A stretch of DNA of 64,000 bases, taken from Epithemia pelagica (taxonomy: Eukaryota > Protista > Bacillariophyta). This document shows, in pieces, positions 1,643-18,234 of this stretch (its first letter is position 1; each line of letters opens with the position of its first letter). The position numbers and the translations under genes were made by a program. The notes beneath the pieces were generated by a model. That model saw only the letters and a list, made by a program, of their open reading frames with translations, was not told where the DNA came from and ran no database searches. Location: the NCBI GenBank assembly GCA_946965045.2, contig OX337237.1, positions 2,480,001 through 2,544,000 on the forward strand. The letters run 5' to 3'.

Positions 1643-3681
1643 CCAAATCAAAGTCCATACTGACTGTATTGTCAATGCTCTCTATTGTAATACAAAAATG
1701 AAGAATCACCGCAATGGTGCCTCGTTCCAAACCAACTCAATGCGTGACACGAAATACTGCGGATGACCCTTCGTCTTCGCTTCGTCTCGGTTGGCTTCGT
1801 TGTTGTGTGGGTGTTGCGCGTGGGCGTGGGTGTGGGTGTGGTTCTTCGGTGTGTGGTTTGAGACGCGACTCAATCGCTCTTCGAGGAGCTTCCAAGAGAT
1901 TCGATGAATGAATCGACGACCGACGGACGGATGAATCTTTCCCAACCAAACTTCAAATCATGGACACAATCCAACTTCCAACTCGGATAGTGTATGCGTC
2001 TGGAATCGTCTTGCGCGTTTGATTCGGCTTTGCACGCGAGGGGAATCTTCTATCCAGTATGTATTGGCCAGAAGATTTTTGGGGTCTACGTCCATCTTAC
2101 GTAGACCAGTACCAGAACCCTGGTCATTTTTGGTCAATTTGGTCGTTTCTGGTCAATTTTTAAGCTAGCTAGGCATGCTTGCATAGGACATAGCTACCAT
2201 AAATAAAGGATGTCACAAAGAAAGCCAGCTGAGCATCCAATTTCACATCGCCCCACCATTTTCCTAAGAGCCTTTTTGCCACGAAACAACAAAAAACAAA
2301 CAAGGCACATGCTCATCTAGGAATGGTGGCCTACCAAACAAACTCATAAAACAATCAAACAGATAAAATGGAGCCCATATACAAAGTGGATGATGCTGGA
2401 ATAGGCTTTCACCGGCTTTGGATTGCTCCAGCCTATGCAGACAAGGCCAGAGAGGCCTGTTTGTCCTTTGCACAGGAAAAGAACCTCTCATTGGATTCTC
2501 CTATGGTTTTTGTCACAAGGACCACTAGAGGAACTACAGAAGAGGCATCTACATTGGGAGAGTACCATTTTAGGTATGATGAGCTTAAAAAGTTCTGTTG
2601 GATTGTTGGGGATTGGCAATCTGCCTGTATTTTTGACAGATCCCATGGTGACGATGAGAGTGGTGTCGTTTCTTCTCCTTCTCGTGTTTGTCCCACTAAT
2701 CCTCTCCCAGCAAAACCAGAAACTATTGCCCAGTACATGCGTTGGAAGTCTGGTGCTGAGAAAACACCATTGATGTACCAGGGCCATTCTGTTTGCGACA
2801 CTAATGGACAGCAGTTGTATTGTGTGGGCCATTGGAAAGACCCTGGCAATATTGACAAGATGCTCGCAGCCCAATTGGTACCCTTCACAATGCATACCCA
2901 GATCTAATTGGGCCCTTTGTGGCAGACTGCCCTCAATGTGTACAAATGAATTCGCAAAGGAATGGTGAGGTAAATGGTTGGTTGTCCTGTCACGCGCACG
3001 CCGGTCGTCCATTGTTACGCCCTTTTGGTAATCCCTGCAACTCAATAATTGTAAGAAATGAGAAAAAGGATCTCAAGACCAAACTTGACTCGGAACACAT
3101 CAGAAGGGGCAATATCCGAATTCTTCCTGGTCATGTGAAAGGGTGGAGGCATATGTTATGGGATGGCAACCCATATACCTGCATGGTGTACACAATGGTA
3201 CTTGTGGGTTTGAGTCTGTTCTTGCGCGCAAGTGAGTTGCTTTCTCTTCGGGCTTGTGACTTCTATGAGAAAGGGCATATCATTTTGGAGGATGGTGTCA
3301 GTTCACTGGTTCTGAAAGTGAAGGGGAAGAATGATAACAAATGGATCTACTTCAAGTTGTACAGGAATGACGTATTGCCCTGGTTCTGTCCTGTACGACA
3401 CTTGCTCTACTATGTTGAGATGGCAAATCTTAAGTGTCCAGAGGGCTATTTGTTTTTTCCAAGGGGTGTTGTGGAGAAACTCCATGCCGGAGAATTAGAG
3501 CATTCTGAAGATATTGCCCCCATGAAATACAAGACTTGGCTAAGTGTATTGAAAGGGATTGTCCGGAAAAAGAATCCTGAGTTGTTCAACAGTGAGACTG
3601 CGACAGACTCGCCATTAGAGGTCCGCAGAAACAAGGACAGCAGACAGACTAATCCTTAACCTTAATGTAGCCAAAACTGTG
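1643..3681 (+). repeat. Left arm of a large inverted duplication. Reverse complement of 16582-15548, then 6519-5616, then 4646-4572.
   Basis: Direct comparison. ccaaatcaaagtccatac at 1643 = rc of 16582-16565. cccactaatCC at 2692-2702 = rc of 15548-15558. tctcccagcaaaacc from 2703 = rc from 6517 downward. actcgccattagagg...ccaaaactgtg at 3607-3681 = rc of 4646-4572. Small indels lie near the outer end. Confidence 0.95.
2368..3659 (+). pseudogene. Crypton-like tyrosine recombinase, internally deleted copy
   Basis: ORFs 2368-2907 and 2919-3659 match the minus-strand YR gene. An extra CC at 2871-2872 shifts the frame. A 969-nt deletion after NSETAT removes HTLRK and the downstream catalytic residues and joins onto the same C-terminus (SPLEVRRNKDSRQTNP*). 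Confidence 0.85.
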
Positions 3682-3894
3682 CACGGTTGCCAACCAGGCC
3701 GACTTGCCCAGACCAACTGCCACCCACATTGAAGAAAAATCCTGTCCTATCCCTCCTTTTCTCCACACCACAGCAATACACACCTCAACTTCTCATCAAC
3801 AACAGCAGCAGCACAAGCTTCACCAGCATCTGTATCAGCAGCAACAGCTTCACCAAAGCAATCCTTTCATTCCAATAACCACAACTTCTAGAGA

Positions 3895-4566
3895 GTAAGT
3901 GCTATGCCCAATCTGACACTTGGGTGACCTGGTCCATTCCAAGACGGTTCTGAATCATCCCTGGTCTTGCTTCTATCTCATTTTCATCAGAAGATACAGC
4001 CCTGGCAATTTGGGCCTTCTCCATCCTGCTCTTTTGGGAAGGCTGATACTGTTTGAAAGCTCTCATTGGAACCGTAAGTGCTACGCCCATTCTGACACTT
4101 GGGCAACCTGGACCATGCCAACACGATTATAAATCATCCCTGTTCGTCCTTTTCTCTCATTTCCATCAGAAGATACAGCCCTGGCAATTTGGGCCTTCTC
4201 CATCCTGCTCTTTTGGGAAGGCTGATACTGTTTGAAAGCTCTCATTGGAACCGTAAGTGCTACGCCCATTCTGACACTTGGGCAACCTGGACCATGCCAA
4301 CACGATTATAAATCATCCCTGTTCGTCCTTTTCTCTCATTTCCATCAGAAGATACAGCCCTGGCAATTTGGGCCTTCTCCATCCTGCTCTTTTGGGAAGG
4401 CTGATACTGTTTGAAAGCTCTCATTGGAACCGTAAGTGCTACGCCCATTCTGGCACTTGGGCAACCTGGACCATGCCAACACGATTATAAATCATCCCTG
4501 TTCGTCCTTTTCTCTCATTTCCATCAGAAGATACAGCCCTGGCAATTTGGGGCTTCTCCATCCTGT
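3895..4566. repeat. Tandem array of a 179-bp unit, about 3.7 copies
   Basis: Units start at 3902, 4081, 4260 and 4439 (ctacgcccattctgacacttggg...). The ORF track repeats identical peptides at 179-nt offsets. The leftmost unit is diverged in its first half. Confidence 0.97.
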
Positions 4567-4593
4567 CTTCCCACAGTTTTGGCTACATTAAGG

Positions 4594-6519
4594 TTAAGGA
4601 TTAGTCTGTCTGCTGTCCTTGTTTCTGCGGACCTCTAATGGCGAGTTGCACTGCCCATTTTGCTTGAACGAACCAGTGTGTGGCCCAATGAAAAAGGACT
4701 CTGGGTCAGAATTGTGACATTTGTCAATACATGACTGGAACCCTTGCCACACCTTCATCATTCTCTTCTTGTATTGTCTGTCCTTTTCACACAACTTCTT
4801 GTCATTGTACGTAGTCATCGTGCACAATAGCTCCCAGAGTACCTTCCTGATCGCTAGGGATTTCTTGTTTTTTTCAGTCGTGATCTGGTCTCCTATCCCC
4901 CCCCCAAATCTTCTTCGATGTGTGTTCGCTGCTTCTTACTGGGGCTCTCATCTTGGGTTTGACCATCATGGGCTGGGGTGTTGTCTTGATATGCTAGGTT
5001 GTCTTTCCTTCTAGTAGCTTCCTCACGACCATCAGCCAATGCCTCATCTCTCATTGCCACCATTAAGTCACGTATTTGCTCAACCTTATCTGTTGGTACA
5101 TACTCAGATAAGAAATCATCCAAAATTCTCATCTTTCCCCCATCGCCACGTAACTTCTTTGCTGACGACAACCCACTCAATCTAAGGTCCACGTCCACAA
5201 ATGCCAATGCCTTCCTAGCACTCTTGTCAGAAGGCAGCCCAAGATCATGCTTGATGAACCACAATGATTGCTCATACAAAGGGTACTGACGCGCTCGGTT
5301 GTGCATACTGACTGTCACAATTGAAGTTGGATCCGGCCCAATATAATTCATCTTCCATATACTGACTCTGTGTTCAGACAGTAGGTCACTCTGCTCTCTG
5401 TAGGACCAATAAAGCATTGTACTGTTTTGAATATACACTCTTGTGGCGCGCCGCCAGGGTGATGTCACTGTAGCAGACACTTGGGTATTTAGTGTTGACT
5501 TGCCCATTCTTGTCCACTGGATTCCTTGTAGCCTCCCTTTCTGGGGCTGTTAAATGATCCAGCACTCCCCAGACTGCGAATAAATAACCAAGCTTGCGAA
5601 GTGTGTGAGTACCAACTGTCGCAGTCTCACTGTTGAACAACTCAGGATTCTTTTTCCGGACAATCCCTTTCAATACACTTAGCCAAGTCTTGTATTTCAT
5701 GGGGGCAATATCTTCAGAATGCTCTAATTCTCCGGCATGGAGTTTCTCCACAACACCCCTTGGAAAAAACAAATAGCCCTCTGGACACTTAAGATTTGCC
5801 ATCTCAACATAGTAGAGCAAGTGTCGTACAGGACAGAACCAGGGCAATACGTCATTCCTGTACAACTTGAAGTAGATCCATTTGTTATCATTCTTCCCCT
5901 TCACTTTCAGAACCAGTGAACTGACACCATCCTCCAAAATGATATGCCCTTTCTCATAGAAGTCACAAGCCCGAAGAGAAAGCAACTCACTTGCGCGCAA
6001 GAACAGACTCAAACCCACAAGTACCATTGTGTACACCATGCAGGTATATGGGTTGCCATCCCATAACATATGCCTCCACCCTTTCACATGACCAGGAAGA
6101 ATTCGGATATTGCCCCTTCTGATGTGTTCCAAGTCAAGTTTGGTCTTGAGATCCTTTTTCTCATTTCTTACAATTATTGAGTTGCAGGGATTACCAAAAG
6201 GGCGTAACAATGGACGACCGGCGTGCGCGTGACAGGACAACCAACCATTTACCTCACCATTCCTTTGCGAATTCATTTGTACACATTGAGGGCAGTCTGC
6301 CACAAAGGGCCCAATTAGATCTGGGTATGCATTGTGAAGGGTACCAATTGCTGCGAGCATCTTGTCAATATTGCCAGGGTCTTTCCAATGGCCCACACAA
6401 TACAACTGCTGTCCATTAGTGTCGCAAACAGAATGGCCCTGGTACATCAATGGTGTTTTCTCAGCACCAGACTTCCAACGCATGTACTGGGCAATAGTTT
6501 CTGGTTTTGCTGGGAGAGG
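4594..6519 (-). pseudogene. Crypton-like tyrosine recombinase gene, 3' part (interrupted by the retrotransposon)
   Basis: YR motifs LFLRASELL (R), VKGKND (K), THTLRKLG (HxxR) and ARHKS (H), preceded by a CPQC...CHAH motif. The reading continues through ORFs 4893-5507 and 4594-4827 via two mutually compensating frameshifts (about 5430, and the C9 run at 4897-4905). No RT/RH of its own, hence Crypton-like. Confidence 0.75.
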
Positions 6520-6931
6520 TACTTCATCCTCATTTGTCACGACACGTGCACCAATCAATCCCATTCGTCCTTGTTCACATAATATAGTATTAAGATATTA
6601 CTTAACCAACACTGGGGGGGTTTAGGCCCCCCACCCATATCCCATTTCGGGGGGGATCCGGAATCGCGCCACGGTCGCAGATCTCCAGAATCTGCTATCC
6701 GTGTTGACTGCGTGCGAGTGTGTATCTAGGTTAGAGACCCCCCTCCATTTACTCACATAGTGAGCCCAAATCTTCGAAATCATCATCGCAAGAAATGGAT
6801 AGTCAGCATGTCAAGGTTGCCACACCTCGACATACCAACCAGGAGAGGAATCCCCATCCCATCAAACAGACAAGCTGACAGACACAAGCGACCTAGGCTG
6901 TCCCCGTAAGAGGTATAGCCGAGTCTTCTCC
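6518..6931 (-). repeat. Split direct repeat B2 (414 bp)
   Basis: Matches 7176-7589 at offset 658. I noticed one substitution (catttgtcac vs cattcgtcac). Confidence 0.95.
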
Positions 6932-6946
6932 GGGCGGGCGGGTGGG

Positions 6947-7177
6947 CGAAAGAAGAGAATCACAGAACCAATGGGTGATCAGATCCTTGGTGACCCGTTC
7001 AACCCTTCTTTCTGACGATTTATGAATCGTCCAAGTTTGTTTGTTGGGAGTAGTCGTTCTGACTATCCCAACAAACGTCGACGTAGCCTTGCAAACCTCT
7101 TGGGATCTTCTTTGGGTGCAATGTCCGTTCCTCGTTCGTCCGTCGGTCCCTTCTTGACCGGGGGCGGTACGATGCGG
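6947..7177 (-). repeat. Split direct repeat A2
   Basis: cgaaagaagagaatcacag...gatgcgg matches 15256-15549 apart from 2 substitutions and a 63-bp duplication present only in A1. Confidence 0.95.
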
Positions 7178-7589
7178 TACTTCATCCTCATTCGTCACGA
7201 CACGTGCACCAATCAATCCCATTCGTCCTTGTTCACATAATATAGTATTAAGATATTACTTAACCAACACTGGGGGGGTTTAGGCCCCCCACCCATATCC
7301 CATTTCGGGGGGGATCCGGAATCGCGCCACGGTCGCAGATCTCCAGAATCTGCTATCCGTGTTGACTGCGTGCGAGTGTGTATCTAGGTTAGAGACCCCC
7401 CTCCATTTACTCACATAGTGAGCCCAAATCTTCGAAATCATCATCGCAAGAAATGGATAGTCAGCATGTCAAGGTTGCCACACCTCGACATACCAACCAG
7501 GAGAGGAATCCCCATCCCATCAAACAGACAAGCTGACAGACACAAGCGACCTAGGCTGTCCCCGTAAGAGGTATAGCCGAGTCTTCTCC
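7176..7589 (-). repeat. Split direct repeat B1 (414 bp)
   Basis: ggtacttcatcctc...gagtcttctcc, a copy of 6518-6931. Confidence 0.95.
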
Positions 7590-7671
7590 CCGTGTGGTCG
7601 TTCCATCTTCGTTCCTCCTCTTTTCCCACTCATACTTCTTTCATTTGTTTTCCTGATCGCTGATCTCAAAG

Positions 7672-9210
7672 TTACAGAAGCTCGGAAAACCTGACCAACG
7701 CCTCCACTGAGGCTTTTGCGTCCGAGTATCTTTCCAACATGCTCATGGATGGAAGGACGCCTCTTCCCTTGATGTGTTTTCTCCAGCGGTTGTTCATCTC
7801 AATGACTTCTCTTGGAATTCTTCTGTTTTGTGCTTCCGTGGTGGCGCCGCGCCTGAAAGATCGCCGAACACTGTAGTCTTCTTCAATGCGGACTGACTCG
7901 CCAATCAACCCCGGGAAGCGATGCTGAACCCGCTTCCAAAGCGGATGAAAGAGCGAATCCAGATTTGTTATGCGAAACATCGGACCGCTCGTAATCCCCT
8001 GTTGGTGCAGGCAACGGATCGCCCTTTCCGTCCAAAGACGAACATCAATGCCAGAAGAAGTTCTGTCCGCCAAGGGGTGCATATAGATTCGGAAAGTGCC
8101 CGTGGTCTGCTTAAAACGGCCCGCCAAAGCAAGAGGCACATGTGGCTTGCGTGAATAATTCAAGCCCTCTTCCCAATATTTGCGCATCAGGCCCACGTCA
8201 ATCTGCGGTAATTCCTCGCCCCTCAACGCCGCAACGTATCCAACAACAACCATTGCCCCAGTCAACGCAAGTTCAACTCTTTGCTGACCCGTTGCTCCAT
8301 TCGTCCATTCGTCTTCCAGAATTGACAACGCCGCCTTGACCTCATCTACGGTCACGGCTTGATCTGGGATCCAAACATCCCCCATTCGGCGATGACACCC
8401 AGTCATAAAGCGACGAAACCAATGGGAGTTGGTTGTACTCGCGCTGAAAAACAGGCCACCTCTTTCTCCTTGTCCCACAGTCGCCAATCCGGTTCCTCCA
8501 GGAAGTGTATGGAAGAAGTTTGAGACCGCAGATCTCACTTTTCGGGCGGTTTCAAATTGGATATGAGTTGAGTTTCGTCCAGCACGCATTGTTTTCATCA
8601 ACATCATGCAAGCTACCTTCAACCCATTGTCTCCCCCTACTGGGAATGGACCCCGATTTGGCAACGGCGCGTCGAGTCCCATTGTTGCGCTTGTTTCCAT
8701 CAGACTCTTGATTTCCCTACGATTCTTCTCGACCGTTGTCCTTTCTCTTGCCCAAAAAGAATCCAGGATGGCCCGGCGGATACACAACAACAATAGCTTG
8801 TCTTCCTCTCTTGTCGTGGGATATCGTCCTTGCAAGTTATAAAAGCAACAACCGTCACATTCAAAGGCGACCATGAGATCATCGCCTGGTCGTGCTTCTT
8901 TGAAACGGTTCGCATCATCATCAAGCTCCCCGTGCCCTTCCAAATCGATCAAAGCATCATCCAAATCTGAAGCTTGCAGTACTGGGAACTTGTCTGTAGT
9001 ATGCTGTCGATAGCATCCGGCATGCCAAATACCCATGCATGTTTTACTCGTTCCCCTTGAATGCCCAAAGTTTGCGCAGCAAATCCCGCACAGCGGTTGG
9101 ACCGGATGCCCACATGCTTGACAGTTCCCCTTCCACTTCGTCCAATAAGCCTGTGGCACGCTTGACTTGCCATGGAGCTCTGTAAAGGAACGGACAAACA
9201 AAAGCAACAA
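7672..9210 (-). CDS. Retrotransposon ORF3, tyrosine recombinase
   Basis: Cys/His-rich N-terminus (CANFG...CMGIWHAGCY), then AALRGEELP (R), GRFKQ (K), RSFRRGATT (xxxR), NNRWRK (W) and LERYSD (Y). Overlaps the end of ORF2. The track's start codon is TTG. Confidence 0.88.
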   Translation of the reverse strand: MLLLFVRSFTELHGKSSVPQAYWTKWKGNCQACGHPVQPLCGICCANFGHSRGTSKTCMGIWHAGCYRQHTTDKFPVLQASDLDDALIDLEGHGELDDDANRFKEARPGDDLMVAFECDGCCFYNLQGRYPTTREEDKLLLLCIRRAILDSFWARERTTVEKNRREIKSLMETSATMGLDAPLPNRGPFPVGGDNGLKVACMMLMKTMRAGRNSTHIQFETARKVRSAVSNFFHTLPGGTGLATVGQGERGGLFFSASTTNSHWFRRFMTGCHRRMGDVWIPDQAVTVDEVKAALSILEDEWTNGATGQQRVELALTGAMVVVGYVAALRGEELPQIDVGLMRKYWEEGLNYSRKPHVPLALAGRFKQTTGTFRIYMHPLADRTSSGIDVRLWTERAIRCLHQQGITSGPMFRITNLDSLFHPLWKRVQHRFPGLIGESVRIEEDYSVRRSFRRGATTEAQNRRIPREVIEMNNRWRKHIKGRGVLPSMSMLERYSDAKASVEALVRFSELL

Positions 9211-12200
9211 TCAACGGTTCGTGATGAGATTTTGGCCAAAGTTCAGTTCCTACGGGGATGGTGAACACAAAATCCGCCACCTTTCCTAGTTTCTTTCTCC
9301 ATCTATTTGTCATGAGGGCAGGGCAGACGAACATGTGGGCAGTTCTCGTGCGGATGTGGCGCGCATCACAAAGTAAGTCAACAGCTACATCAGCAATCGC
9401 TGGTGGTGGAGTCCATATTAACTCCCCCTCTTCAAAAGCCTCATCAAACCATTCGTGTGTTGTCAAGGTCCTCCACTTGTATGCTGTGTTTCCCACAGAC
9501 TCTAACCAAGGAATGACATTGTCCTGCCGTTCGACAACCGACTTGTTCAAAGGAACATACAGCAACATGTTAACTCCTGTCATGACTCCTGTCATGAGGT
9601 CTCCTCGGGAAAGACCGTCGGTGCCTTGTTCTATCATTCTGGTTCCAGCCACCCAAATCACCCTAACAAATATGTGTCCATTCATTTCCAGTTGTTTTGT
9701 TCTCAAGACCAGCTCGAATAGCAATCTCGACGTCGACGTCCCTTTGTAGAAAGCTGACTCAGCCGTCGAGTTGTCCGTGAACATGAACACTTCAGTTCCC
9801 ATGGGCAACTTCTTATCTTTCACCAGTCCTTCCAATCGCAACACCAGGTTGTACAATTCACGAAAATTGGACGAGCGAGAACCATATTCTCGCGTCCACA
9901 ATCCATGCTCTGTTTCTACCGATGCCTCTCCATAGAGCCATAAAGAAGATCCAAACCCCTCACCTGATGCATCTGCAAAGATCATCGCGACACTCGCTCC
10001 CGACGTCGGTCTTGCCAAAATTTTCGGCGGATGTTCCAAATCTGTCAGCCTATGCAATGCGTATACATCGTCTTTAAAGCGAGGAGCCTGTTTCACTTTT
10101 CCTGGTGCGTGCATTTCCCTTTCTCTTTTCCGAACCACAGCCCTGCGGTCCTTTTCCTTCAAACGCCATCCTTCCACGTCTCTGTCGTCTCTCCATGATT
10201 CCAACGTCAAGTGGATCCCTTTCAAATAAGGGACCATGACATCAAACGTAAGAGAAACATAGACCAGAAATCCTCGGATCCTTTCCAACTCCTTTCGATC
10301 CACCAATCCACCGTCGTCAGCCCAATCCTTCAAGACCCCAACCAACTTTCGCGTCTTATTCCATCTCTCTTGGGATACGGTCTTATAAACCTTCCCCTCA
10401 TTCGACGATTCCACAACTGCTCCTGCCCATGCACCTGGTGCTTTGCTTGGTGGACGCCGTTTTCTCGCGGCATCCTGCAATCCGAAATAAGAAGCACCTT
10501 TGGCCATTCTGCTGGCCGCCAGCCATGCTTCCTCCTCAGATGGTGCAGTTTCACGTAAGTCGTCGACGTATGGATGCACATCTGCTGCTATGTCCCCATT
10601 TGCTCTCACTTTACTGATCCATGGATGTGACGGATCATAATGCTCATCTCCCGGAAGATTGATTCGTACGTCCGTCCAACCAAAAATGTTGTCCGGATCC
10701 GACTTGTCGCCAAATATGATTCGCTTCACTCTCTGTGCACATTGAGTAGTTTGGTAAGGTGAAGTCGTCAGACCCATGGCGCATCGGCACCAGGCCTCCC
10801 AAATCCTCGTTGATCCAAACTTCTCCTGCAACTCCTCGGGAAACAACTCGGTAATATCAATGCCCGTGTATTGCCTAAGATCCGGGTGGATCCAAAAGTT
10901 GAGGAACATCTCTCCGAAGTCATTGTCAGCGGACCACGTTTTTGGCTCCACTGTTCTCAACATCGAAGTGACATTTCCGAGTCCAAACCAAGGAGCGAAC
11001 AAAGCGTCGTTTAGCCCACTTTTTGTACCATCGTATACCATCCGAATGTCTGAGTCACCCTTCGGCACTGAGAAGAAACTGGTGAGTGATTTTATATCAG
11101 CCGTCTTCACAATGTACCCTCGGTGCCTAACTTTTGTCAGCTTCTTCTTTTCGAACGACCGAGCCTCTGGGTCCGGATTCGCCCGTTGTCTCCTTCTATA
11201 CGCTGGTGGCTCCCCGATCCACATCGGATCCACACCATCCCGCATTTCCACCATCCAATCGAGCTTTGGCATTCGCCAAAAGAATGGTGAAGAACCGTGG
11301 TCCCAGTCCCACCATGACGCCTGCGACGCATGGTTGAGTGCACTCAGACCAGCTCTCTTGGTTCTTTCTTTCTCATCGTTGTCGTAGCGAAATCGTTGCT
11401 GTCTCCACCAACTCCAAAAATCACTGCAGACTCTTCGCTTCCAATATTTCAAGGCTAGTCGACGAATTACATTCAGCGCCTCAATGCACCGGAATCGGTC
11501 AGCAACACTTGTCATCTCAAAGTGAGAACAAATGCGATCGTCCCAAAGATACGTTGGTATCTCTGCATCATCGGATTTAGTCGCTTTGAGATTCCGATCC
11601 TCTCTTCTCTCCTCCATGTTCAACGATCCGCCACCTTCGCTGTCAAGAGCAGTAAACAATTCACAATCCTCTGTCATTCGCGTTACCGGTGTTGGATCGA
11701 CTCCCATGACCACTTCTTCATTTTCACTTCGCTGCTGCCCCCTAGAGACCTCGTCCTTCTCATTCGTCCAGCCCAGAATCGACCTTGCAACCTGCACCCT
11801 GCTCTTGAACGGGACTCCGATCTCGGAAGTCCATCGGTCTAGCTCTTGATCCGAACCTTTCTTGTGCAACGCCGCTGGTAAATCCAGCGCCACCGCAAGT
11901 TCGCTTGGTGCAATTTTTCGCTCCACAAATCCTGATCTCGTCGCATAGACGCTGGGCAAGACATGCAGCCTTCCCAAATCCTTCTTCCAAACCAACTTTC
12001 TTTCCAGTATTGAGACCCCACGTTTTGACAAGCTGTCTTCAGTATCGTCCCTAAACATACTCAACGGACATTCCTTGCCTTGAATTGTCGGATCGATAAC
12101 ACCTCGAAAAGTCGTGTGCTTGAGCCCTTGTTCCAGGTGGTCCGCCCAACAATCTACAAATCTCCTCTCATCCAAAACCTTTCTCTCCGCTACATGTATC

Positions 12201-12838
12201 CATGATTCCAGATCAGTAACACCACCCAAAGCAGTGTGATCCAATTTCATGATACCTTGTATCCAGACTCCTTGGACCGTCGACGAGGGTCCTCCCTTCT
12301 TCCTTCCTCCAATCCAAAACACAAGTTTCACATCATGCCGCAACCAAACCTCGTGACCAGGACCTGGTATTATTCCCTTCTCAAAGAAAATGACGTCCAC
12401 TGGTTCCCTTGTTTCCCAATCTGCTGGCGACACGTAAGCGATTCTGCGACGCTTGAGTCCTCGATTCTTGGTTTGTCTCTCTTGTAAATCCAGAGCCTTG
12501 CTTCTCCAATCCATCGCCCCTGTTTCTTCCTGTATCAAATCCTTCTCCAACACATCGATCCAAACAACATCTCCAAGCGAAGACACCGCCCAGAACCAAA
12601 AGGGGGTGCTCGTGCTCACCAAACCGACTCGCCATTTTCCTTTTTCTACGGACAACTTCGAAACCATCCGTTCGGCGACACCATCGTTTGAATTTGCAGC
12701 TGGTGCATGTATCCTAGAATAATCTTTAGTGTCTTGGCTCGCTAGTCTTTGCGCTTTGTTTTCTCGAGTCTCCAAAACTTCGCTTGTAGTTGTCTTTCTT
12801 TTCGTAGTTTTACGACTGTTGCGGTCACTTTTCTCCAT
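9044..12838 (-). CDS. Retrotransposon ORF2, reverse transcriptase plus RNase H
   Basis: 1264 aa. RT motifs IRMVYDGTKSGLN, DNDFGEMFLNF, MGLTTSPY and YVDD. RNase H motifs IFADAS, SSNFREL, FTDNST and TDGLSRG. Confidence 0.95.
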   Translation of the reverse strand: MEKSDRNSRKTTKRKTTTSEVLETRENKAQRLASQDTKDYSRIHAPAANSNDGVAERMVSKLSVEKGKWRVGLVSTSTPFWFWAVSSLGDVVWIDVLEKDLIQEETGAMDWRSKALDLQERQTKNRGLKRRRIAYVSPADWETREPVDVIFFEKGIIPGPGHEVWLRHDVKLVFWIGGRKKGGPSSTVQGVWIQGIMKLDHTALGGVTDLESWIHVAERKVLDERRFVDCWADHLEQGLKHTTFRGVIDPTIQGKECPLSMFRDDTEDSLSKRGVSILERKLVWKKDLGRLHVLPSVYATRSGFVERKIAPSELAVALDLPAALHKKGSDQELDRWTSEIGVPFKSRVQVARSILGWTNEKDEVSRGQQRSENEEVVMGVDPTPVTRMTEDCELFTALDSEGGGSLNMEERREDRNLKATKSDDAEIPTYLWDDRICSHFEMTSVADRFRCIEALNVIRRLALKYWKRRVCSDFWSWWRQQRFRYDNDEKERTKRAGLSALNHASQASWWDWDHGSSPFFWRMPKLDWMVEMRDGVDPMWIGEPPAYRRRQRANPDPEARSFEKKKLTKVRHRGYIVKTADIKSLTSFFSVPKGDSDIRMVYDGTKSGLNDALFAPWFGLGNVTSMLRTVEPKTWSADNDFGEMFLNFWIHPDLRQYTGIDITELFPEELQEKFGSTRIWEAWCRCAMGLTTSPYQTTQCAQRVKRIIFGDKSDPDNIFGWTDVRINLPGDEHYDPSHPWISKVRANGDIAADVHPYVDDLRETAPSEEEAWLAASRMAKGASYFGLQDAARKRRPPSKAPGAWAGAVVESSNEGKVYKTVSQERWNKTRKLVGVLKDWADDGGLVDRKELERIRGFLVYVSLTFDVMVPYLKGIHLTLESWRDDRDVEGWRLKEKDRRAVVRKREREMHAPGKVKQAPRFKDDVYALHRLTDLEHPPKILARPTSGASVAMIFADASGEGFGSSLWLYGEASVETEHGLWTREYGSRSSNFRELYNLVLRLEGLVKDKKLPMGTEVFMFTDNSTAESAFYKGTSTSRLLFELVLRTKQLEMNGHIFVRVIWVAGTRMIEQGTDGLSRGDLMTGVMTGVNMLLYVPLNKSVVERQDNVIPWLESVGNTAYKWRTLTTHEWFDEAFEEGELIWTPPPAIADVAVDLLCDARHIRTRTAHMFVCPALMTNRWRKKLGKVADFVFTIPVGTELWPKSHHEPLIVAFVCPFLYRAPWQVKRATGLLDEVEGELSSMWASGPTAVRDLLRKLWAFKGNE

Positions 12839-12841
12839 CTC

Positions 12842-15205
12842 TCAAGATTTCTTCGTCGACTTGTTTGCTGAGGACACTGCCTGATTCACAGCACGTTGCA
12901 TCTTGTCCAATCGATCATTCAAACTCATTTGGAGCGTATCAAACTTTGACCGAGGCGTCGTAAAGCGAATAAGATGCTCATGGAGAATGAGTGCAATCTT
13001 TGGATGGCCGCTAAAATCTGCTGCACGGTACTCCTTCATGACTCGATGCGCCTTCAATGTTCCCCAGAGCATTCCACCCGGGGTGTTGGATGCCCGTCCA
13101 GATGCCCGAGCTTCTCTCAAGCTCTTAAAGACCGCGCGCACACAGTGGGATATCAATATCCACACCTCTTGTTCACTCGCCTCGCTTTCCGCTTGGACTT
13201 GGGCATGATATCTTACCATCCAATGGGTAAGTTCATCCCAAAACGTCTTGCTCCACAAGAGGAGTTCCTTAGCCACACTCGATGGCTCAGTTCCAAACGC
13301 AAAGAGCTCACCCACTGCTTGTTCTATTGTATGGACCCCGTCCTTCACATAATCCAAGATACGCTGGTGGATGCCCTCGCGTCCGGAGGGTGGGTGAAAG
13401 TCCGCAAATCTTGGGACTGCTCCAAGCGCTCGGGAATTTGTCGTCGTTGATTGGTCTGATCCTTTGCCCAACAACGGCGGGACTTCAAGATTGAAGGACG
13501 CGATGTACGCCGTGTGATACGGCGTCTTGTCCCTGACCTTGGCTGTTGTCGCGCGTTGATTGGCAGCTCGTTCTTCGTCGGGGCTAGCATCAGATGTAGC
13601 CAACGAGAGCAATGAGATAGCATCCACGAAAACATGGGGATCGGCAGTAGCGTGATGCAAATCCATCCAAGTTACACAAAAGGCCCGTGACGTAAACACG
13701 ATGGATCCAATCGTTACCGAGTCAGCGTCCACCTGTTCCTTCAGGTCCTTCAACAGCGTCTGCATGTTGTTCATTTCCTCTTGCATCTTTGACAGTTCCA
13801 CGTTTCCTCCGATGTTTGTATTTCCTTGTTGAGACGACGGAGAAGCAGCAAATCGAACTCCCTGGCCAGACTGTGTTCCTTGAATACCGGACTTCAGTCC
13901 TCCCGTGGACCAGCTAAACGCTCCACCTCCTACCGAACCGTTGCCCATGGAGACTCCGCTACTTGTTGATGCTGCTTGTGCTTGTTCCAAGTTAAACAAA
14001 CGCTGTTGCAGTTGGTGCAAAGCTTCAGACCATTTGCCTCCAGGATCTGAAGGCGATCTCGATGAGCGCGACAGGAGCGTCAAGGTCGGATCGACAAATT
14101 GAACTCGGAAATCAGTAGTGGTGTCAGCGAGAAAAGACTCCAATTCCTTTTGCACAAGTCCCTTGAACTGACCCGCCAATAAACCAACACGAGTTTCTAA
14201 GGCCGCCAACTTCCCCTCGATTGCCGAATCGTCTCTTGCAGATGGCGCCGCCTTCTGATTCAGTCGTTCAATGACTAACTGTTCAACCGACGCCATATTC
14301 GACACGCAGCTATCGAGGACCTGAAAGGCTGAACGCGTCCCAAAATGAGAAGGACGTTTGCCCAATAACTCATGGAGCACTGACAATTTCAACTCCATCT
14401 TGTCGAACTGTTCGTCCTGATTCTCCTCGGACACACGCCAATCAGCCACCTCCCGAGCCAAATCGTCACGCAGAGTGGTTACATTTTCCACCAAGTTGCT
14501 CCATGCTCCGCCTTGCAGAATCTTCACCGCTGGAGTTGGAGTTTGGGAGCTGATGTCCATAGGCACATCCTTCCAGGGGATTTCACGCCGTCTAAGCTTG
14601 GGAGTCACAAGGCCATGCTCGTCATCGTCATCCATCACAGTTTCAACTTGAACCGATCTTTTCTTGGGACGTGGAGTCATGGTGAAATCCACTTCTGTCT
14701 TGGTGGTCTCCATAAATTGTGCGGCGGTAGTTGGATCCACACCTTCACCCGACGCGGAAGAAGCCTTCCGCAAAGCTGTGAACGATGCTTGCCAACTTTC
14801 CAGTGTGCGCGGGCTGAGTTCCATCTCATTCCAATCGACGCCGCTCACGCACCGTCCCGGTAGAACAGGAGTGCAAAAAACAGTTCCCAAAGCATCGGAA
14901 GACGATGTCCCACTTGAACCACGAATAAAAATGGCAGAGGTGTCATCGCCCACAAGCGAAAACCACGAATTCTTCTTGAGGGAATGCGAAGCCACTTGAC
15001 AATCCGAACGAACACACATGCGCTGCCCTGCGCCGACAAGCCCACGACAAACCGACTCGAAAACAGACTGTTCGAAACGAACGACACCGTAGAGAGAACC
15101 CGAACGAAGGCTCCCCCCCCCGGTCACACTATCACCAGACACAGACTCACCTGACGACCCCACAGAAGGAGAAGAATCCGGAGTTCCTCCCCACGCAAAC
15201 GTCAT
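12842..15205 (-). CDS. Retrotransposon ORF1, gag-like
   Basis: 787 aa lying between A1 and pol. N-terminal C-x9-C-x4-C-x4-H motif (CRGLVGAGQRMCVRSDCQVASH) and coiled-coil segments. Assigned by position. Confidence 0.75.
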   Translation of the reverse strand: MTFAWGGTPDSSPSVGSSGESVSGDSVTGGGSLRSGSLYGVVRFEQSVFESVCRGLVGAGQRMCVRSDCQVASHSLKKNSWFSLVGDDTSAIFIRGSSGTSSSDALGTVFCTPVLPGRCVSGVDWNEMELSPRTLESWQASFTALRKASSASGEGVDPTTAAQFMETTKTEVDFTMTPRPKKRSVQVETVMDDDDEHGLVTPKLRRREIPWKDVPMDISSQTPTPAVKILQGGAWSNLVENVTTLRDDLAREVADWRVSEENQDEQFDKMELKLSVLHELLGKRPSHFGTRSAFQVLDSCVSNMASVEQLVIERLNQKAAPSARDDSAIEGKLAALETRVGLLAGQFKGLVQKELESFLADTTTDFRVQFVDPTLTLLSRSSRSPSDPGGKWSEALHQLQQRLFNLEQAQAASTSSGVSMGNGSVGGGAFSWSTGGLKSGIQGTQSGQGVRFAASPSSQQGNTNIGGNVELSKMQEEMNNMQTLLKDLKEQVDADSVTIGSIVFTSRAFCVTWMDLHHATADPHVFVDAISLLSLATSDASPDEERAANQRATTAKVRDKTPYHTAYIASFNLEVPPLLGKGSDQSTTTNSRALGAVPRFADFHPPSGREGIHQRILDYVKDGVHTIEQAVGELFAFGTEPSSVAKELLLWSKTFWDELTHWMVRYHAQVQAESEASEQEVWILISHCVRAVFKSLREARASGRASNTPGGMLWGTLKAHRVMKEYRAADFSGHPKIALILHEHLIRFTTPRSKFDTLQMSLNDRLDKMQRAVNQAVSSANKSTKKS

Positions 15206-15255
15206 GGTGGAACGAATGAGGTGGATGGCACGGTCGACAAGGCGAAAAACCGAAA

Positions 15256-15549
15256 CGAAAGAAGAGAATCACAGAACCAATGGGTGATCAGATCCTTGGT
15301 GACCCGTTCAACCCTTCTTTCTGACGATTAATCACAGAACCAATGGGTGATCAGATCCTTGGTGACCCGTTCAACCCTTCTTTCTGACGATTTATGAATC
15401 GTCCAAGTTTGTTTGTTGGGAGTAGTCGTTCTGACTATCCCAACAAACGTCGACGTAGCCTTGCAAACCTCTTGGGATCTTCTTTGGGTGCAATGTCCGT
15501 TCCTCGTTTGTCAGTCGGTCCCTTCTTGACCGGGGGCGGTACGATGCGG
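15256..15549 (-). repeat. Split direct repeat A1 (contains a 63-bp tandem duplication, 15267-15392)
   Basis: Matches A2. aatcacagaacc...ctgacgatt occurs twice (15267-15329, 15330-15392). Confidence 0.95.
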
Positions 15550-15882
15550 ATTAGTGGGACAAACACGAGAAGGAGAAGAAACGACACCACTCTCATCGTC
15601 ACCATGGGATCTGTCAAAAATACAGGCAGATTGCCAATCCCCAACAATCCAACAGAACTTTTTAAGCTCATCATACCTAAAATGGTACTCTCCCAATGTA
15701 GATGCCTCTTCTGTAGTTCCTCTAGTGGTCCTTGTGACAAAAACCATAGGAGAATCCAATGAGAGGTTCTTTTCCTGTGCAAAGGACAAACAGGCCTCTC
15801 TGGCCTTGTCTGCATAGGCTGGAGCAATCCAAAGCCGGTGAAAGCCTATTCCAGCATCATCCACTTTGTATATGGGCTCCAT
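15548..15882 (-). pseudogene. Crypton-like tyrosine recombinase gene, 5' part (separated from its 3' part by the insertion)
   Basis: Encodes MEPIYKVDD...SPSRVCPTN. In the left-arm copy this peptide is contiguous with PLPAKPETIAQYMRW. Confidence 0.85.
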
Positions 15883-16566
15883 TTTATCTGTTTGATTGTT
15901 TTATGAGTTTGTTTGGTAGGCCACCATTCCTAGATGAGCATGTGCCTTGTTTGTTTTTTGTTGTTTCGTGGCAAAAAGGCTCTTAGGAAAATGGTGGGGC
16001 GATGTGAAATTGGATGCTCAGCTGGATTTCTTAGTGACATCCTTTATTTATGGTAGCTATGTCCTATGCAAGCATGCCTAGCTAGCTTAAAAATTGACCA
16101 GAAACGACCAAATTGACCAAAAATGACCAGGGTTCTGGTACTGGTCTACGTAAGATGGACGTAGACCCCAAAAATCTTCTGGCCAATATATACTGGATAG
16201 AAGATTCCCCTCGCGTGCAAAGCCGAATCAAACGCGCAAGACGATTCCAGACGCATACACTATCCGAGTTGGAAGTTGGATTGTGTCCATGATTGGAAGT
16301 TTGGTTGGGAAAGATTCATCCGTCCGTCGGTCGTCGAGTCATTCATCGAATCTCTTGGAAGCTCCTCGAAGAGCGATTGAGTCGCGTCTCAAACCACACA
16401 CCACACCCACACCCACGCCCACGCGCAACACCCACACAACAACGAAGCATACCGAGACGAAGCGAAGACGAAGGTATTTCGTGTCACGCATTGAGTTGGT
16501 TTGGAACGAGGCACCATTGCGGTGATTCATTGTTGTATTTTTCGAAAAGAGCATTGACAATACAGT

Positions 16567-18234
16567 ATGGACTTTGATTTGGCCGCGCAACGATTGGCTC
16601 GTGACCATGAACAACGCCGCCGACGACAACGACAACGACACGGTGGTCGTGGTGGTGTCGTGTCGGCCGAGGCCCAACGTCAAGTCCAATTGCGCAAACA
16701 AGCCCACGAACGAGCCTTGCTCCAAAAACAACGACAAGAACACCGGATGCAGGTGTGGCAGTCCTACATGCGGGACTGCGATCGACAGTTGCACGTGACA
16801 AGTTTGCTCCCCAGTACAACGACGACAACGACTCGACTTCCGGCACATCATTGGTCCACCATTCCGCACTTGGAATTGACGGCGACCTCGATTCATGGCG
16901 ACGGGGACAAGATTGCCTTGCCGCCCAGTGTTTTGGAGCACTTGACGACAACGACCACCACGACCAACCAGCGGGACGGCACTCCGTGGATTTTTCGCAT
17001 TGCCGTACGCAATCCCAATTACACGAGCTTTCCGCACTCTCCACAAATTCAAGCCCTGGAACCACGCAACGATGATGACGACGACGACATGGATGTGGAT
17101 GACAATGACGACGACACGGCTGTGGCGCAACGAACGGCCCCGTATGTCGACGAATTGTCCCAGTATTATTATCGGGCCTGGACGCATGGAACCGTGGTGG
17201 AATTTACCCAAGACGAGGGTTGTATTGGATTGCCGCATCGAATGGCCTCCACCTTGATTGGTCAAAGCCAGGGGCAGGTTCCGGTGCGACGGACGGTGGA
17301 TCCAGCCGCCGCCGCCGTCCGAACCACGACGGAGGAACCACTACACAAGGGTGTGACTGCCTCCGCCCACGAGGAGGAAGGACACACCACAACAAAAGAA
17401 GAAGAAGAAGAAGAATATCATACATCAGGTCATTTGGCATGGGGTGCCTTTGACGTTCCGGCGGTACCGATTGAAGTCAGTTTGGTCCACTTGCCCAAGG
17501 GTCGAGCCTGTACCTTGCAACCGACGGCACAAGCCATTACGGCCGGCTTTTATCACTTGCCCAATGTGAAACTCGTTTTGGAACAATCCTTGATTCGAAC
17601 CCGAGCCGTCTTGTCGGTGCACGATTCGGTCGAAACCTGGCATCGCGGCGTGTGTTATCCCTTGATCGTGACACATGTCGAACCGGCCACCTATCACGCC
17701 GTCGTGTGCCTGGATACCGATTTGACAGTGGATTTTGCCCCGCCGCCAACGTCCGAAACGACCAACCGGAACACGGCCACGCAGGAGGCTGCTGATTCGA
17801 CAACGACGACGACACCTAGTGGTGGGGGTGGTCATGTGTTGGGTCAACGGGTGGGAGGCGATTCGTCGTCGTCATCCCAACCACAAGCACCACAATCACA
17901 GTCCACGTCGGTGCCAACCTCCGTTGTGGATTCTTCCTCGGTGCTACCCGACGACGACGACGATGAACCGGCCGTGGGAACGCCCAATGTGTGTACGGTG
18001 CAAATTCGAACCGCCACACGACGATTGCAACGACGGTTTGTCCGCGATACCACCACTCTGACGGACTTGTTTGCCTGGATTACTCAACAACACCAACAAC
18101 AGCAAACGGCCAACTTTCAATTGGTGACACGCTTGCCCCGACGGGTCCTGACATTGCAACAACAAGCAGATGCCACCTTGCAGGAATTGGAGTTTGGGAC
18201 CCAGGAATTGTGGTGGTTGGAACTCCTCGAATAA
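16567..18234 (+). CDS. UFD1-like protein with C-terminal UBX/ubiquitin-like domain
   Basis: UFD1 motifs IHGDGDKIALPPSVL, THGTVVEFT..EG.IGLP and LPKG..CTLQP. C-terminal VQIRT...LQRRF...LFAWI...FQLVTRLPRR...TLQEL is UBX-like. Confidence 0.85.
   Translation: MDFDLAAQRLARDHEQRRRRQRQRHGGRGGVVSAEAQRQVQLRKQAHERALLQKQRQEHRMQVWQSYMRDCDRQLHVTSLLPSTTTTTTRLPAHHWSTIPHLELTATSIHGDGDKIALPPSVLEHLTTTTTTTNQRDGTPWIFRIAVRNPNYTSFPHSPQIQALEPRNDDDDDDMDVDDNDDDTAVAQRTAPYVDELSQYYYRAWTHGTVVEFTQDEGCIGLPHRMASTLIGQSQGQVPVRRTVDPAAAAVRTTTEEPLHKGVTASAHEEEGHTTTKEEEEEEYHTSGHLAWGAFDVPAVPIEVSLVHLPKGRACTLQPTAQAITAGFYHLPNVKLVLEQSLIRTRAVLSVHDSVETWHRGVCYPLIVTHVEPATYHAVVCLDTDLTVDFAPPPTSETTNRNTATQEAADSTTTTTPSGGGGHVLGQRVGGDSSSSSQPQAPQSQSTSVPTSVVDSSSVLPDDDDDEPAVGTPNVCTVQIRTATRRLQRRFVRDTTTLTDLFAWITQQHQQQQTANFQLVTRLPRRVLTLQQQADATLQELEFGTQELWWLELLE

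What the first reader, a model, noticed from the sequence alone, without database searches (positions are those of the whole stretch)
2690..15560. All four junctions of a tyrosine-recombinase integration captured in one locus, crossing at a CC dinucleotide
Read in element orientation: empty target cccactaat-CC-tctcccagc (2692-2711, left arm); internal B1/A2 junction ggatgaagta-CC-gcatcgtac (about 7176); 5' insertion junction cccactaat-CC-gcatcgtac (about 15548); 3' insertion junction ggatgaagta-CC-tctcccagc (about 6518). This is the attB x attP to attL + attR pattern expected if a circular cDNA with a B/A junction recombines with the target over only 2 nt of identity, with no separate target-site duplication. 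The circle model for DIRS-order elements is established; seeing donor, empty and filled sites side by side is direct evidence for the crossover core in this family.
Basis: partly seen in the sequence, partly recalled or inferred. Interest (0 to 1): 0.85.

Follow-up and report, generated by a model that had tools for sequence, protein, structure and literature searches.

The report
Diatom recombinase retrotransposon insertion junctions
A 9-kb jumping gene in a diatom genome sits next to an unoccupied twin of its insertion site, showing that it entered by a cut-and-rejoin swap at a shared "CC"; this mechanism has already been inferred for related elements, so the locus is a clean new example, not a new principle.

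Summary
A 9.03-kb element lies on the minus strand at 6518-15549 with the split-direct-repeat layout A1...B1-A2-B2. It interrupts the right arm of a near-identical inverted duplication. The left arm holds the uninterrupted site, with a single CC at 2701-2702. That CC stands at the 5' junction, the 3' junction and the internal B1/A2 junction, and there is no other duplication.

Pfam and PDB sequence searches found nothing in the element's proteins. Predicted structures show a retroviral-type RT/RNase H in ORF2 and a Cre/Xer-like tyrosine recombinase in ORF3, both with invariant catalytic residues. A second haplotype assembly has the same architecture, and Logan contigs of public runs carry the empty site.

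I tested the "CC core" on further independent insertions in the same genome. The element ends are invariant. The 3' side is CC in 5 of 5 and the 5' side is CC in 6 of 8. One young copy and one old copy share only the inner C, and other copies share 3 or 5 nt. So the shared core is 1-5 nt, most often CC, and is not a strict 2-nt requirement.

The same logic, with a 3-bp circle junction identical to the target, is published for DIRS1-like elements. Other first-stage readers noted sister copies elsewhere in this genome. This is a new member of a known kind, of moderate interest.

The parts
2701..2702 (+). CC of the unoccupied (attB-like) site in the left arm: cccactaat-CC-tctcccagc
   Evidence: Spanned by the X2 contig 2427-3370; an X1 unitig ends at 2702.
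1643..3681 (+). Left arm of the inverted duplication. It carries an uninterrupted Crypton-like YR gene copy (ORFs 2368-2907 and 2919-3659), frameshifted by a 2-nt indel at 2870-2871.
   Evidence: Atlas look-alikes carry Phage_integrase, core-binding or DUF3504 domains (lead only).
4572..6519 (-). Inner part of the right arm: the 3' part of the host YR-like gene, up to the 3' insertion junction.
15548..16582 (-). Outer part of the right arm: the 5' part of the host gene, from the 5' insertion junction outward.
15548..15549 (-). CC at the 5' (attL-like) junction: cccactaat-CC-gcatcgtac
15256..15549 (-). Repeat A1 (includes the CC). It carries a 63-bp internal duplication relative to A2.
   Evidence: (D3, D4).
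12842..15205 (-). ORF1, 787 aa, in the gag position. No family match.
9044..12838 (-). ORF2, 1264 aa. Residues 545-1110 are reverse transcriptase plus RNase H. The N-terminal ~540 aa and the C-terminal ~150 aa are unassigned.
   Evidence: Model pLDDT 78, pTM 0.73. Foldseek matches HIV-1, MLV, CaMV and foamy-virus RTs at E ~1e-11. Invariant residues of the domain (its residue 1 = ORF2 residue 545): D94, D96, Y-[VI]-D-D at 213-216, and RNase H D412, E450, D478, D530.
7672..9036 (-). ORF3, 454 aa: tyrosine recombinase with an N-terminal Cys/His-rich region.
   Evidence: Model pLDDT 79. The top 43 Foldseek matches are all YRs. VIA Z 13.8 to Cre and 12.1 to XerA. R271, K308, W417 and Y436 are invariant; R391 (29/30) and R394 (26/30) nearly so.
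7176..7589 (-). Repeat B1 (414 nt, includes the CC at 7176-7177).
7176..7177 (-). CC at the internal B1/A2 junction (attP-like): ggatgaagta-CC-gcatcgtac
6947..7177 (-). Repeat A2 (includes the CC).
6518..6931 (-). Repeat B2 (414 nt, includes the CC at 6518-6519, the attR-like junction: ggatgaagta-CC-tctcccagc).
   Evidence: In an X4 contig, homology stops exactly at 6518.

Best explanation
The element at 6518-15549 (minus strand) is an intact, fairly young tyrosine-recombinase retrotransposon. Its layout is Ngaro-like: A1, ORF1 (gag position), ORF2 (RT/RNase H), ORF3 (YR), then B1-A2-B2. It inserted into one copy of an inverted pair of Crypton-like recombinase genes in a diploid pennate-diatom-like genome.

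Shown:
- The target flanks are contiguous in the twin copy, with one CC.
- The same CC lies at both insertion junctions and between B1 and A2.
- The element ends (GCATCG... and ...AGTA-CC) are invariant across independent copies and subfamilies.
- The proteins have RT/RNase H and YR folds with conserved catalytic residues.

Inferred:
- cDNA is closed, or templated, into a form that carries the B/A junction.
- ORF3 recombines that junction with a target at or beside the CC, which gives A1 at one end and B2 at the other without a target-site duplication.
- The only single breakpoint that fits all five two-ended insertions lies between the two Cs (gtaC|Cgcatcg). The target carries C on the 3' side of that point in 5/5 insertions and C on the 5' side in 6/8. 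Identity is therefore favoured but minimal: 1-5 nt, most often CC.
For: - Junction strings and repeat overlaps.
- Same architecture on a second haplotype contig.
- Empty site present in Logan contigs.
- YR fold and catalytic residues.
- RT/RNase H fold and motifs.
- Independent insertions: L003/L005, L004/L006, L008, L009, L010, L011, L092.
- Enrichment of the shared core: P about 2e-3. C at 5' position -1 in 8/8 copies (the P of 6e-5 was for the first 7).
- Published precedent for DIRS1-like elements, a 3-bp circle junction identical to the target: PMC3266345 and PMC7192593.
Against: - No extrachromosomal circle or transcript was observed. No RNA run holds the stretch.
- The empty site is a paralogue, not an allele.
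- Divergence of the arms (about 0.4%) and of the element's own repeats (3/634) is similar, so the order of duplication and insertion is unresolved.
- Two of eight 5' junctions have TC or GC instead of CC, so 'crossing at CC' is a tendency, not a rule.
- Only 5 insertions have both ends.
- For DIRS-1 the dominant cDNA is linear and single-stranded, and circle junctions could not be amplified (PMC7192593).
Confidence: 0.8

Rival explanations
1. The CC is a 2-bp target-site duplication made by a staggered cut, not a shared recombination core.
For: CC flanks both ends and occurs once in the empty site. Taken alone, this is formally what a 2-bp TSD looks like.
Against: The CC also sits between B1 and A2 inside the element, in the window and in four other subfamily or family copies, so it belongs to the element. 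Two copies have TC or GC at the 5' side but CC at the 3' side, which a TSD does not predict. The element encodes a YR and no DDE integrase was detected.
Confidence: 0.03
2. A linear cDNA with fixed ends (C-GCATCG...AGTA-C) is joined to a broken target by host end-joining that uses 1-5 nt of microhomology. The recombinase would not be the integrating enzyme.
For: Variable microhomology of 1, 1, 2, 3 and 5 nt resembles microhomology-mediated joining. DIRS-1 cDNA is mostly linear and single-stranded (PMC7192593).
Against: Element ends are exact in 8 independent 5' junctions and 5 independent 3' junctions. The window's target lost or gained no base, which is unusual for end joining. The YR catalytic residues are invariant or nearly invariant across 30 diverse homologues, which implies selection for activity. 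The B/A junction is conserved as one CC overlap.
Confidence: 0.1
3. The left-arm 'empty site' is not a never-occupied target. It is the product of precise YR-mediated excision (attL x attR) or of gene conversion between the palindrome arms after both arms carried the element.
For: Arm divergence (5 mismatches in 855 nt in the outer part; 1 mismatch plus one 2-nt indel in the inner part) is no greater than A1/A2 and B1/B2 divergence (3/634), so the duplication need not predate the insertion.
Against: There is no positive evidence of excision. The simpler history is duplication followed by one insertion. Either history leaves the junction logic unchanged.
Confidence: 0.12
4. The inverted duplication, with one empty and one filled arm, is an assembly artefact such as a fold-back chimera or a haplotype mis-join.
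For: The arms are 99-100% identical around a short centre of 179-bp tandem repeats. Long-read assemblers sometimes create this configuration.
Against: Two separately assembled haplotype contigs share the structure but differ by 38 substitutions in 18.9 kb and by 8 repeat units. Logan contigs of other runs of the same organism carry the empty site and fork exactly at 2702.
Confidence: 0.03

Closest known systems
Ngaro retrotransposons (DIRS order), e.g. DrNgaro1 of zebrafish and the Ngaro elements of Cafeteria burkhardae (PMC8547959)
   Same: Split direct repeats in the A1-[ORFs]-B1A2B2 arrangement. ORF order is gag position, RT/RNase H, then YR. No methyltransferase, protease or DDE integrase was detected. 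No target-site duplication. Found in a stramenopile host.
   Different: The RT and YR are too divergent for Pfam RVT_1 or Phage_integrase to score. ORF2 carries an extra ~540-aa N-terminal region and a conserved ~150-aa C-terminal region of unknown fold. At ~9 kb the element is larger than the ~6-7 kb Cafeteria elements. Phylogenetic placement was not tested.
DIRS1-like elements (Dictyostelium DIRS-1 and relatives; Piednoel et al. 2011, PMC3266345)
   Same: An internal 'circle junction' where the two end-matching sequences overlap by a few bases. The proposed integration is YR recombination between that short sequence and an identical target sequence, with no TSD.
   Different: DIRS1-like elements have inverted terminal repeats plus internal complementary regions, a 3-bp junction (usually AAT/ATT-like) and a Dam-like methyltransferase. 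Here the repeats are direct, the core is C or CC, and no MT is detected.
PAT-like elements (Pat1, Toc3, Kangaroo)
   Same: Split direct repeats, and RT/RNase H plus YR.
   Different: PAT-like elements carry the methyltransferase domain. None was detected here by Pfam, either in the window protein or in 25 homologues. Atlas neighbours with Dam or DNA_methylase domains are only leads.
Crypton DNA transposons (Goodwin et al. model; PMC3212892, PMC13465315)
   Same: Eukaryotic YR elements flanked by short direct repeats that reflect microhomology between a circular junction and the target, not a true TSD. The disrupted host gene in this window looks like such a Crypton-type YR.
   Different: Cryptons have no reverse transcriptase and no split direct repeats. 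Their shared cores are typically 4-6 bp.

Membership tests
DIRS order (tyrosine-recombinase retrotransposons) | Encodes a reverse transcriptase with RNase H of the LTR-retroelement type | tested here: met
   AlphaFold model of ORF2 residues 545-1110 matches HIV-1, MLV, CaMV and foamy-virus RT-RNase H at Foldseek E ~1e-11. The Y[VI]DD motif and the DEDD residues are invariant. Pfam RVT_1 reaches only E = 0.06, in 4 of 26 homologues.
DIRS order (tyrosine-recombinase retrotransposons) | Encodes a tyrosine recombinase instead of a DDE integrase | tested here: met
   The ORF3 model has only YRs among its top 43 Foldseek matches, with Z 13.8 to Cre and 12.1 to XerA. R271, K308, W417 and Y436 are invariant in 30 homologues; R391 (29/30) and R394 (26/30) nearly so. 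No rve or DDE domain was found in any ORF.
DIRS order (tyrosine-recombinase retrotransposons) | Insertion without a target-site duplication; the terminal sequences are joined in an internal junction | tested here: met
   The empty paralogous site compared with the filled site shows only the shared CC. The B1/A2 junction contains one CC.
Ngaro superfamily | Split direct repeats A1-[ORFs]-B1A2B2, with the internal repeats downstream of the YR | tested here: met
   A1 15256-15549, B1 7176-7589, A2 6947-7177, B2 6518-6931; ORF3 ends at 7672.
Ngaro superfamily | No methyltransferase domain | tested here: inconclusive
   No Pfam MT or Dam hit in ORF2 or in 25 homologues. However, a conserved ~150-aa region after RNase H was not folded. 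Atlas neighbours at scores 0.83-0.92 include clusters with Dam or DNA_methylase domains.
Ngaro superfamily | RT and YR sequences group with reference Ngaro sequences in a phylogeny | not tested
   No reference DIRS, PAT, Ngaro or VIPER sequences were available through the tools.
DIRS1-like superfamily | Inverted terminal repeats with internal complementary regions | tested here: not met
   The terminal and internal repeats are direct, not inverted.
PAT-like superfamily | Split direct repeats together with a Dam-like methyltransferase domain | tested here: inconclusive
   The repeats are present. The MT is not detected by sequence and was not tested by fold.

The most novel reading that the evidence does not exclude
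The recombinase cuts at one fixed phosphodiester bond, between the two Cs of the B/A junction, and needs at most one matching base in the target. This would fit integration by a single strand exchange on a (partly) single-stranded cDNA circle that is then resolved by replication, as in integron attC x attI or CTX-phage integration, and would not fit a classical two-step exchange across a 6-8-bp homologous overlap. That reading would reconcile the short cores of eukaryotic YR retroelements with the single-stranded cDNA reported for DIRS-1.
Probability: 0.12. Interest if true: 0.7.

Novelty: new member of a known kind. Interest (0 to 1): 0.4.

Why it matters
Integration of tyrosine-recombinase retrotransposons has never been reconstituted. 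Everything known about their crossover comes from comparing termini, internal junctions and rare empty sites.

This locus gives a base-exact set of substrate-like and product-like sites for an intact, apparently young element. The extra copies define invariant ends and a 1-5-nt core. Together these supply concrete attP-like and attB-like sequences and a recombinase (ORF3) for a biochemical test.

It also documents a large, unannotated clade of such elements. Hundreds of homologues occur in diatom and aquatic metagenome data, and none has a precomputed Pfam annotation in the search tables. Standard domain-based TE annotation would therefore miss them.

Tried and rejected
1. Pfam scans of all element ORFs at E up to 10 found nothing relevant. 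PDB sequence searches with single proteins and with a 26-sequence profile also found nothing. The RT and YR identities rest on predicted folds and motifs.
2. L007, L008, L011 and L092 were fetched to add insertions. Their 3' ends are cut by Copia insertions or lack A2/B2, so only L008, L011 and L092 give a junction, and only the 5' one.
3. The scan of JGI metagenome contigs gave 80 relatives. Their contigs are collapsed units with k-mer end overlaps and no flanks, and their termini are not conserved with this family. They add no junction data, and their 'circular' look is an assembly effect, not evidence of circles.
4. Read laying worked on Logan contigs only, so I could not look for reads of extrachromosomal circles, transcript ends or single long reads across the palindrome.
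5. I looked for a target consensus or extended similarity between targets and the B/A junction. None appears beyond the core. An ACTAATCC string is shared by the window's target and the 5' flank of L008, but it is out of register and the flanks are otherwise unrelated.
6. I considered a GTAC...GTAC dyad around the junction as a classical 6-bp overlap site. I rejected it as unsupported, because all eight 5' junctions keep the element's GCATC intact.
Full report
**1. What is in the sequence**

- On the plus strand the left arm reads ...gtcccactaat CC tctcccagc..., with the CC at 2701-2702.
- The reverse complement of 15549-onward continues the left flank up to and including that CC, then switches to gcatcgtacc....
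- The reverse complement of 6519-downward reads ...ggatgaagta CC tctcccagc.
- At 7176-7177 the element itself reads ...ggatgaagta CC gcatcgtacc....
- The inverted-repeat pairs I1 (1848-2702 with 15548-16402) and I3 (2701-2870 with 6350-6519) overlap by exactly these two bases.
- So do the direct repeats A (6958-7177 = 15330-15549) and B (6518-6931 = 7176-7589).

The element therefore has the layout A1 ... B1 A2 B2 on the minus strand, and nothing is duplicated at the target beyond the CC.

**2. What the element is**

It has three intact minus-strand ORFs:
- ORF1, 12842-15205, 787 aa.
- ORF2, 9044-12838, 1264 aa.
- ORF3, 7672-9036, 454 aa.

None gives a Pfam hit at E up to 10 that bears on function. 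None matches a PDB sequence, even with a 26-sequence profile. RVT_1 appears only at E = 0.06, in 4 of 26 homologues.

The family is nevertheless large. There are more than 340 ORF2 relatives and about 180 ORF3 relatives at E <= 1e-3, among only the 8000 candidates scored. All lack a precomputed Pfam annotation. They come from this ENA assembly, from aquatic metagenomes and from the diatom Epithemia clementina.

Structure prediction settles the identities.
- ORF2 residues 545-1110 (pLDDT 78, pTM 0.73) match HIV-1, FIV, MLV, foamy-virus, HERV-K and CaMV RT-RNase H at Foldseek E ~1e-11.
- In that domain (its residue 1 = ORF2 residue 545), motif A (D94, D96), Y-[V/I]-D-D (213-216) and the RNase H residues D412, E450, D478 and D530 are invariant.
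- ORF3 (pLDDT 79) has only tyrosine recombinases among its top 43 Foldseek matches.
- ORF3 aligns to Cre with Z 13.8 over 235 residues and to archaeal XerA with Z 12.1 at rmsd 3.1.
- R271, K308, W417 and Y436 are invariant in 30 homologues, and R391 (29/30) and R394 (26/30) nearly so. The R394-W417 spacing of 23 equals R292-W315 in Cre (the Cre numbering is from my own knowledge).

The element is thus a tyrosine-recombinase retrotransposon with Ngaro-like organisation.

**3. The setting**

The element interrupts the right arm of an inverted duplication. The arms are 1643-3681 and 4572-6519 plus 15548-16582, around a centre of 179-bp tandem repeats.

The duplicated unit carries a gene whose product looks like a Crypton-type recombinase: it has LRASE...HTLRK motifs, and its Atlas look-alikes carry Phage_integrase, core-binding or DUF3504 domains (a lead only).

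The locus was also recovered from ENA assembly ERZ21939226, contig ctg1359l, as L001/L002. That copy is 99.8% identical to the window, has 8 extra 179-bp units, and has the same empty left arm and filled right arm. It is evidently the other haplotype of a diploid genome.

Logan contigs of public runs of the same organism add support:
- A 944-bp contig of X2 covers 2427-3370 without a mismatch.
- An X1 unitig ends exactly at 2702, which is the fork expected when both the empty and the filled continuation exist in the reads.

The arms differ by 5 substitutions in the 855 nt outside the site, and by one substitution plus a 2-nt indel (2870-2871) inside it. The element's own repeats differ at 3 of 634 positions (the repeat mismatches are). 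The order of duplication and insertion cannot be resolved, and a precise excision from the left arm cannot be excluded.

**4. Is the CC a rule?**

One insertion with 2 shared bases is expected by chance in about 16% of homology-free insertions (my own calculation), so I collected more copies.

Exact-protein look-ups returned further loci from the same assembly. Allelic pairs, recognised by their shared flanking genes, count as one insertion.

| Insertion | 5' side | 3' side | Shared core | Notes |
|---|---|---|---|---|
| Window | CC | CC | 2 nt | |
| L003 = L005 | ...caggta CC | CC caaagtc... | 5 nt (GTACC) | 97.5-98% identical to the window element |
| L009 | ...acacgcg CC | CC gagcaaa... | 3 nt | subfamily; ORF3 72% identical |
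| L004 = L006 | ...aaggggg TC | CC tggggg... | 1 nt | old copy, ~77-83% identical |
| L010 | ...gtgacac GC | CC tcacgtg... | 1 nt | young copy: A1 = A2 100%, so the GC is original |

Three more copies give only the 5' junction, and all three have CC there: L008, L011 and L092.

In every copy the element starts with GCATCG (GCACCG in L011), and where the 3' end is present it ends with AGTA-CC. In every copy that has an internal junction, that junction reads AGTA-CC-GCATCG.

- The 3' side is CC in 5/5.
- At the 5' side, position -1 is C in 8/8 and position -2 is C in 6/8.
- The single breakpoint compatible with all five two-ended insertions is gtaC|Cgcatcg.
- Around that point the summed identity is 12 nt, against about 3.3 expected. 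The negative-binomial P is about 2e-3, or about 9e-3 if the match probability is 0.3.
- In an X4 contig, homology to B2 stops exactly at 6518 before running into unrelated sequence. This is a further 3' junction that keeps the CC.

The microhomology is real. It is a 1-5-nt core that is most often CC, not an obligatory dinucleotide.

**5. Mechanism**

The data fit the model proposed for this order of elements. A cDNA form carrying the B/A junction recombines, through the element's YR, with a target that shares a very short sequence. This yields A1 on one side and B2 on the other without a TSD.
- A 2-bp TSD is excluded, because the CC is part of the element's own internal junction.
- Microhomology-mediated end joining of a linear cDNA is not excluded by sequence alone. 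It is disfavoured by the exact ends, by the untouched target and by the strong conservation of the YR active site.
- No circle, transcript or enzymatic activity was observed here. Those steps are inferred.

**6. Comparison with what is known**

For DIRS1-like elements, Piednoel et al. describe a 3-bp 'circular junction' where the two internal complementary regions overlap. They describe integration by recombination between this sequence and an identical genomic sequence, without TSD (PMC3266345). Malicki et al. restate this, show that the internal region is essential, and find mostly linear single-stranded cDNA with no amplifiable circle junction (PMC7192593).

Ngaro elements with the A1-[ORFs]-B1A2B2 layout are known in another stramenopile, Cafeteria (PMC8547959). 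Cryptons are likewise flanked by microhomology and not by TSDs (PMC13465315).

The finding is therefore a clean new instance of a known principle, in a divergent diatom lineage of split-direct-repeat elements, with a shorter and GC-type core. Whether the lineage belongs within Ngaro or PAT or stands apart was not tested. No reference sequences were available, and the ORF2 C-terminal region was not folded.

Other first-stage notes on this genome report sister copies with a 'GTACC' or 'CCG' core. These agree with my L003 and L009 readings, but they are not independent evidence.

**7. Verdict**

Novelty: new member of a known kind. Interest is moderate at 0.4, mainly as a ready-made substrate set for the first biochemical test of a YR-retrotransposon integrase, and as a pointer to a clade invisible to Pfam-based annotation.

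Noticed in passing
L010:11482-13189: A young sister-subfamily copy ends in B1-A2-B2-A3-B3, so it has one extra A-B unit. All junctions read ...ctagta-CC-gcatcg. This could reflect integration of a multimeric junction-bearing intermediate or unequal recombination.
   Followed up: partly
L006:11218-11642 versus L004:12435-13540: The two alleles of one old insertion differ. L004 has A1...B1-A2-B2. L006 has A1...B followed directly by the same flank, as expected from B1 x B2 recombination that deletes A2 and one B.
   Followed up: partly
window 2870-2871: The left-arm copy of the Crypton-like recombinase gene has 2 extra C bases relative to the right arm, which shifts its frame. Both copies of the host gene are therefore disrupted: one by the frameshift and one by the retrotransposon.
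   Followed up: partly
window 3895-4552 (L002:18269-20375): The centre of the palindrome is an array of 179-bp tandem repeats, with about 3.7 units in the window and about 11.7 in the other haplotype. Read-derived contig depth there is 20-100 times that of the flanks, so the repeat is abundant elsewhere in the genome.
   Followed up: no
window 6975-7177: The first ~46-200 nt of repeat A (the element's 5' end) have roughly 20-fold higher contig depth than the rest of the element in runs X1 and X2. This end is shared by contigs that diverge on both sides. The 5' terminus is conserved across many subfamilies, whereas the B repeats differ (65 nt in L009, 414 nt here).
   Followed up: partly
window 15256-15395: A1 carries a 63-bp tandem duplication that A2 lacks.
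   Followed up: no
window 9044-12838 (ORF2 residues 1-540 and 1110-1264): Large conserved regions before the RT and after the RNase H have no family or fold assignment. One example is the invariant W-x-PPPA...CPALM...RWRK block. Atlas neighbours include clusters with Dam or C5 DNA-methylase domains.
   Followed up: no
L044, L047, L065, L091, L041 (metagenome contigs): Related elements in JGI metagenomes assemble as ~6.2-9.7 kb contigs whose two ends overlap by 97-127 nt (an assembler k-mer-sized overlap). They look circular because the A and B repeats collapse. Such contigs could be mistaken for circular viral or plasmid genomes.
   Followed up: partly
window 16567-18234 and 357-1031: The neighbouring host genes are intron-free ORFs for a UFD1/UBX-domain protein and a GST C-terminal-domain protein. 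The element nest sits in ordinary gene-rich DNA.
   Followed up: no
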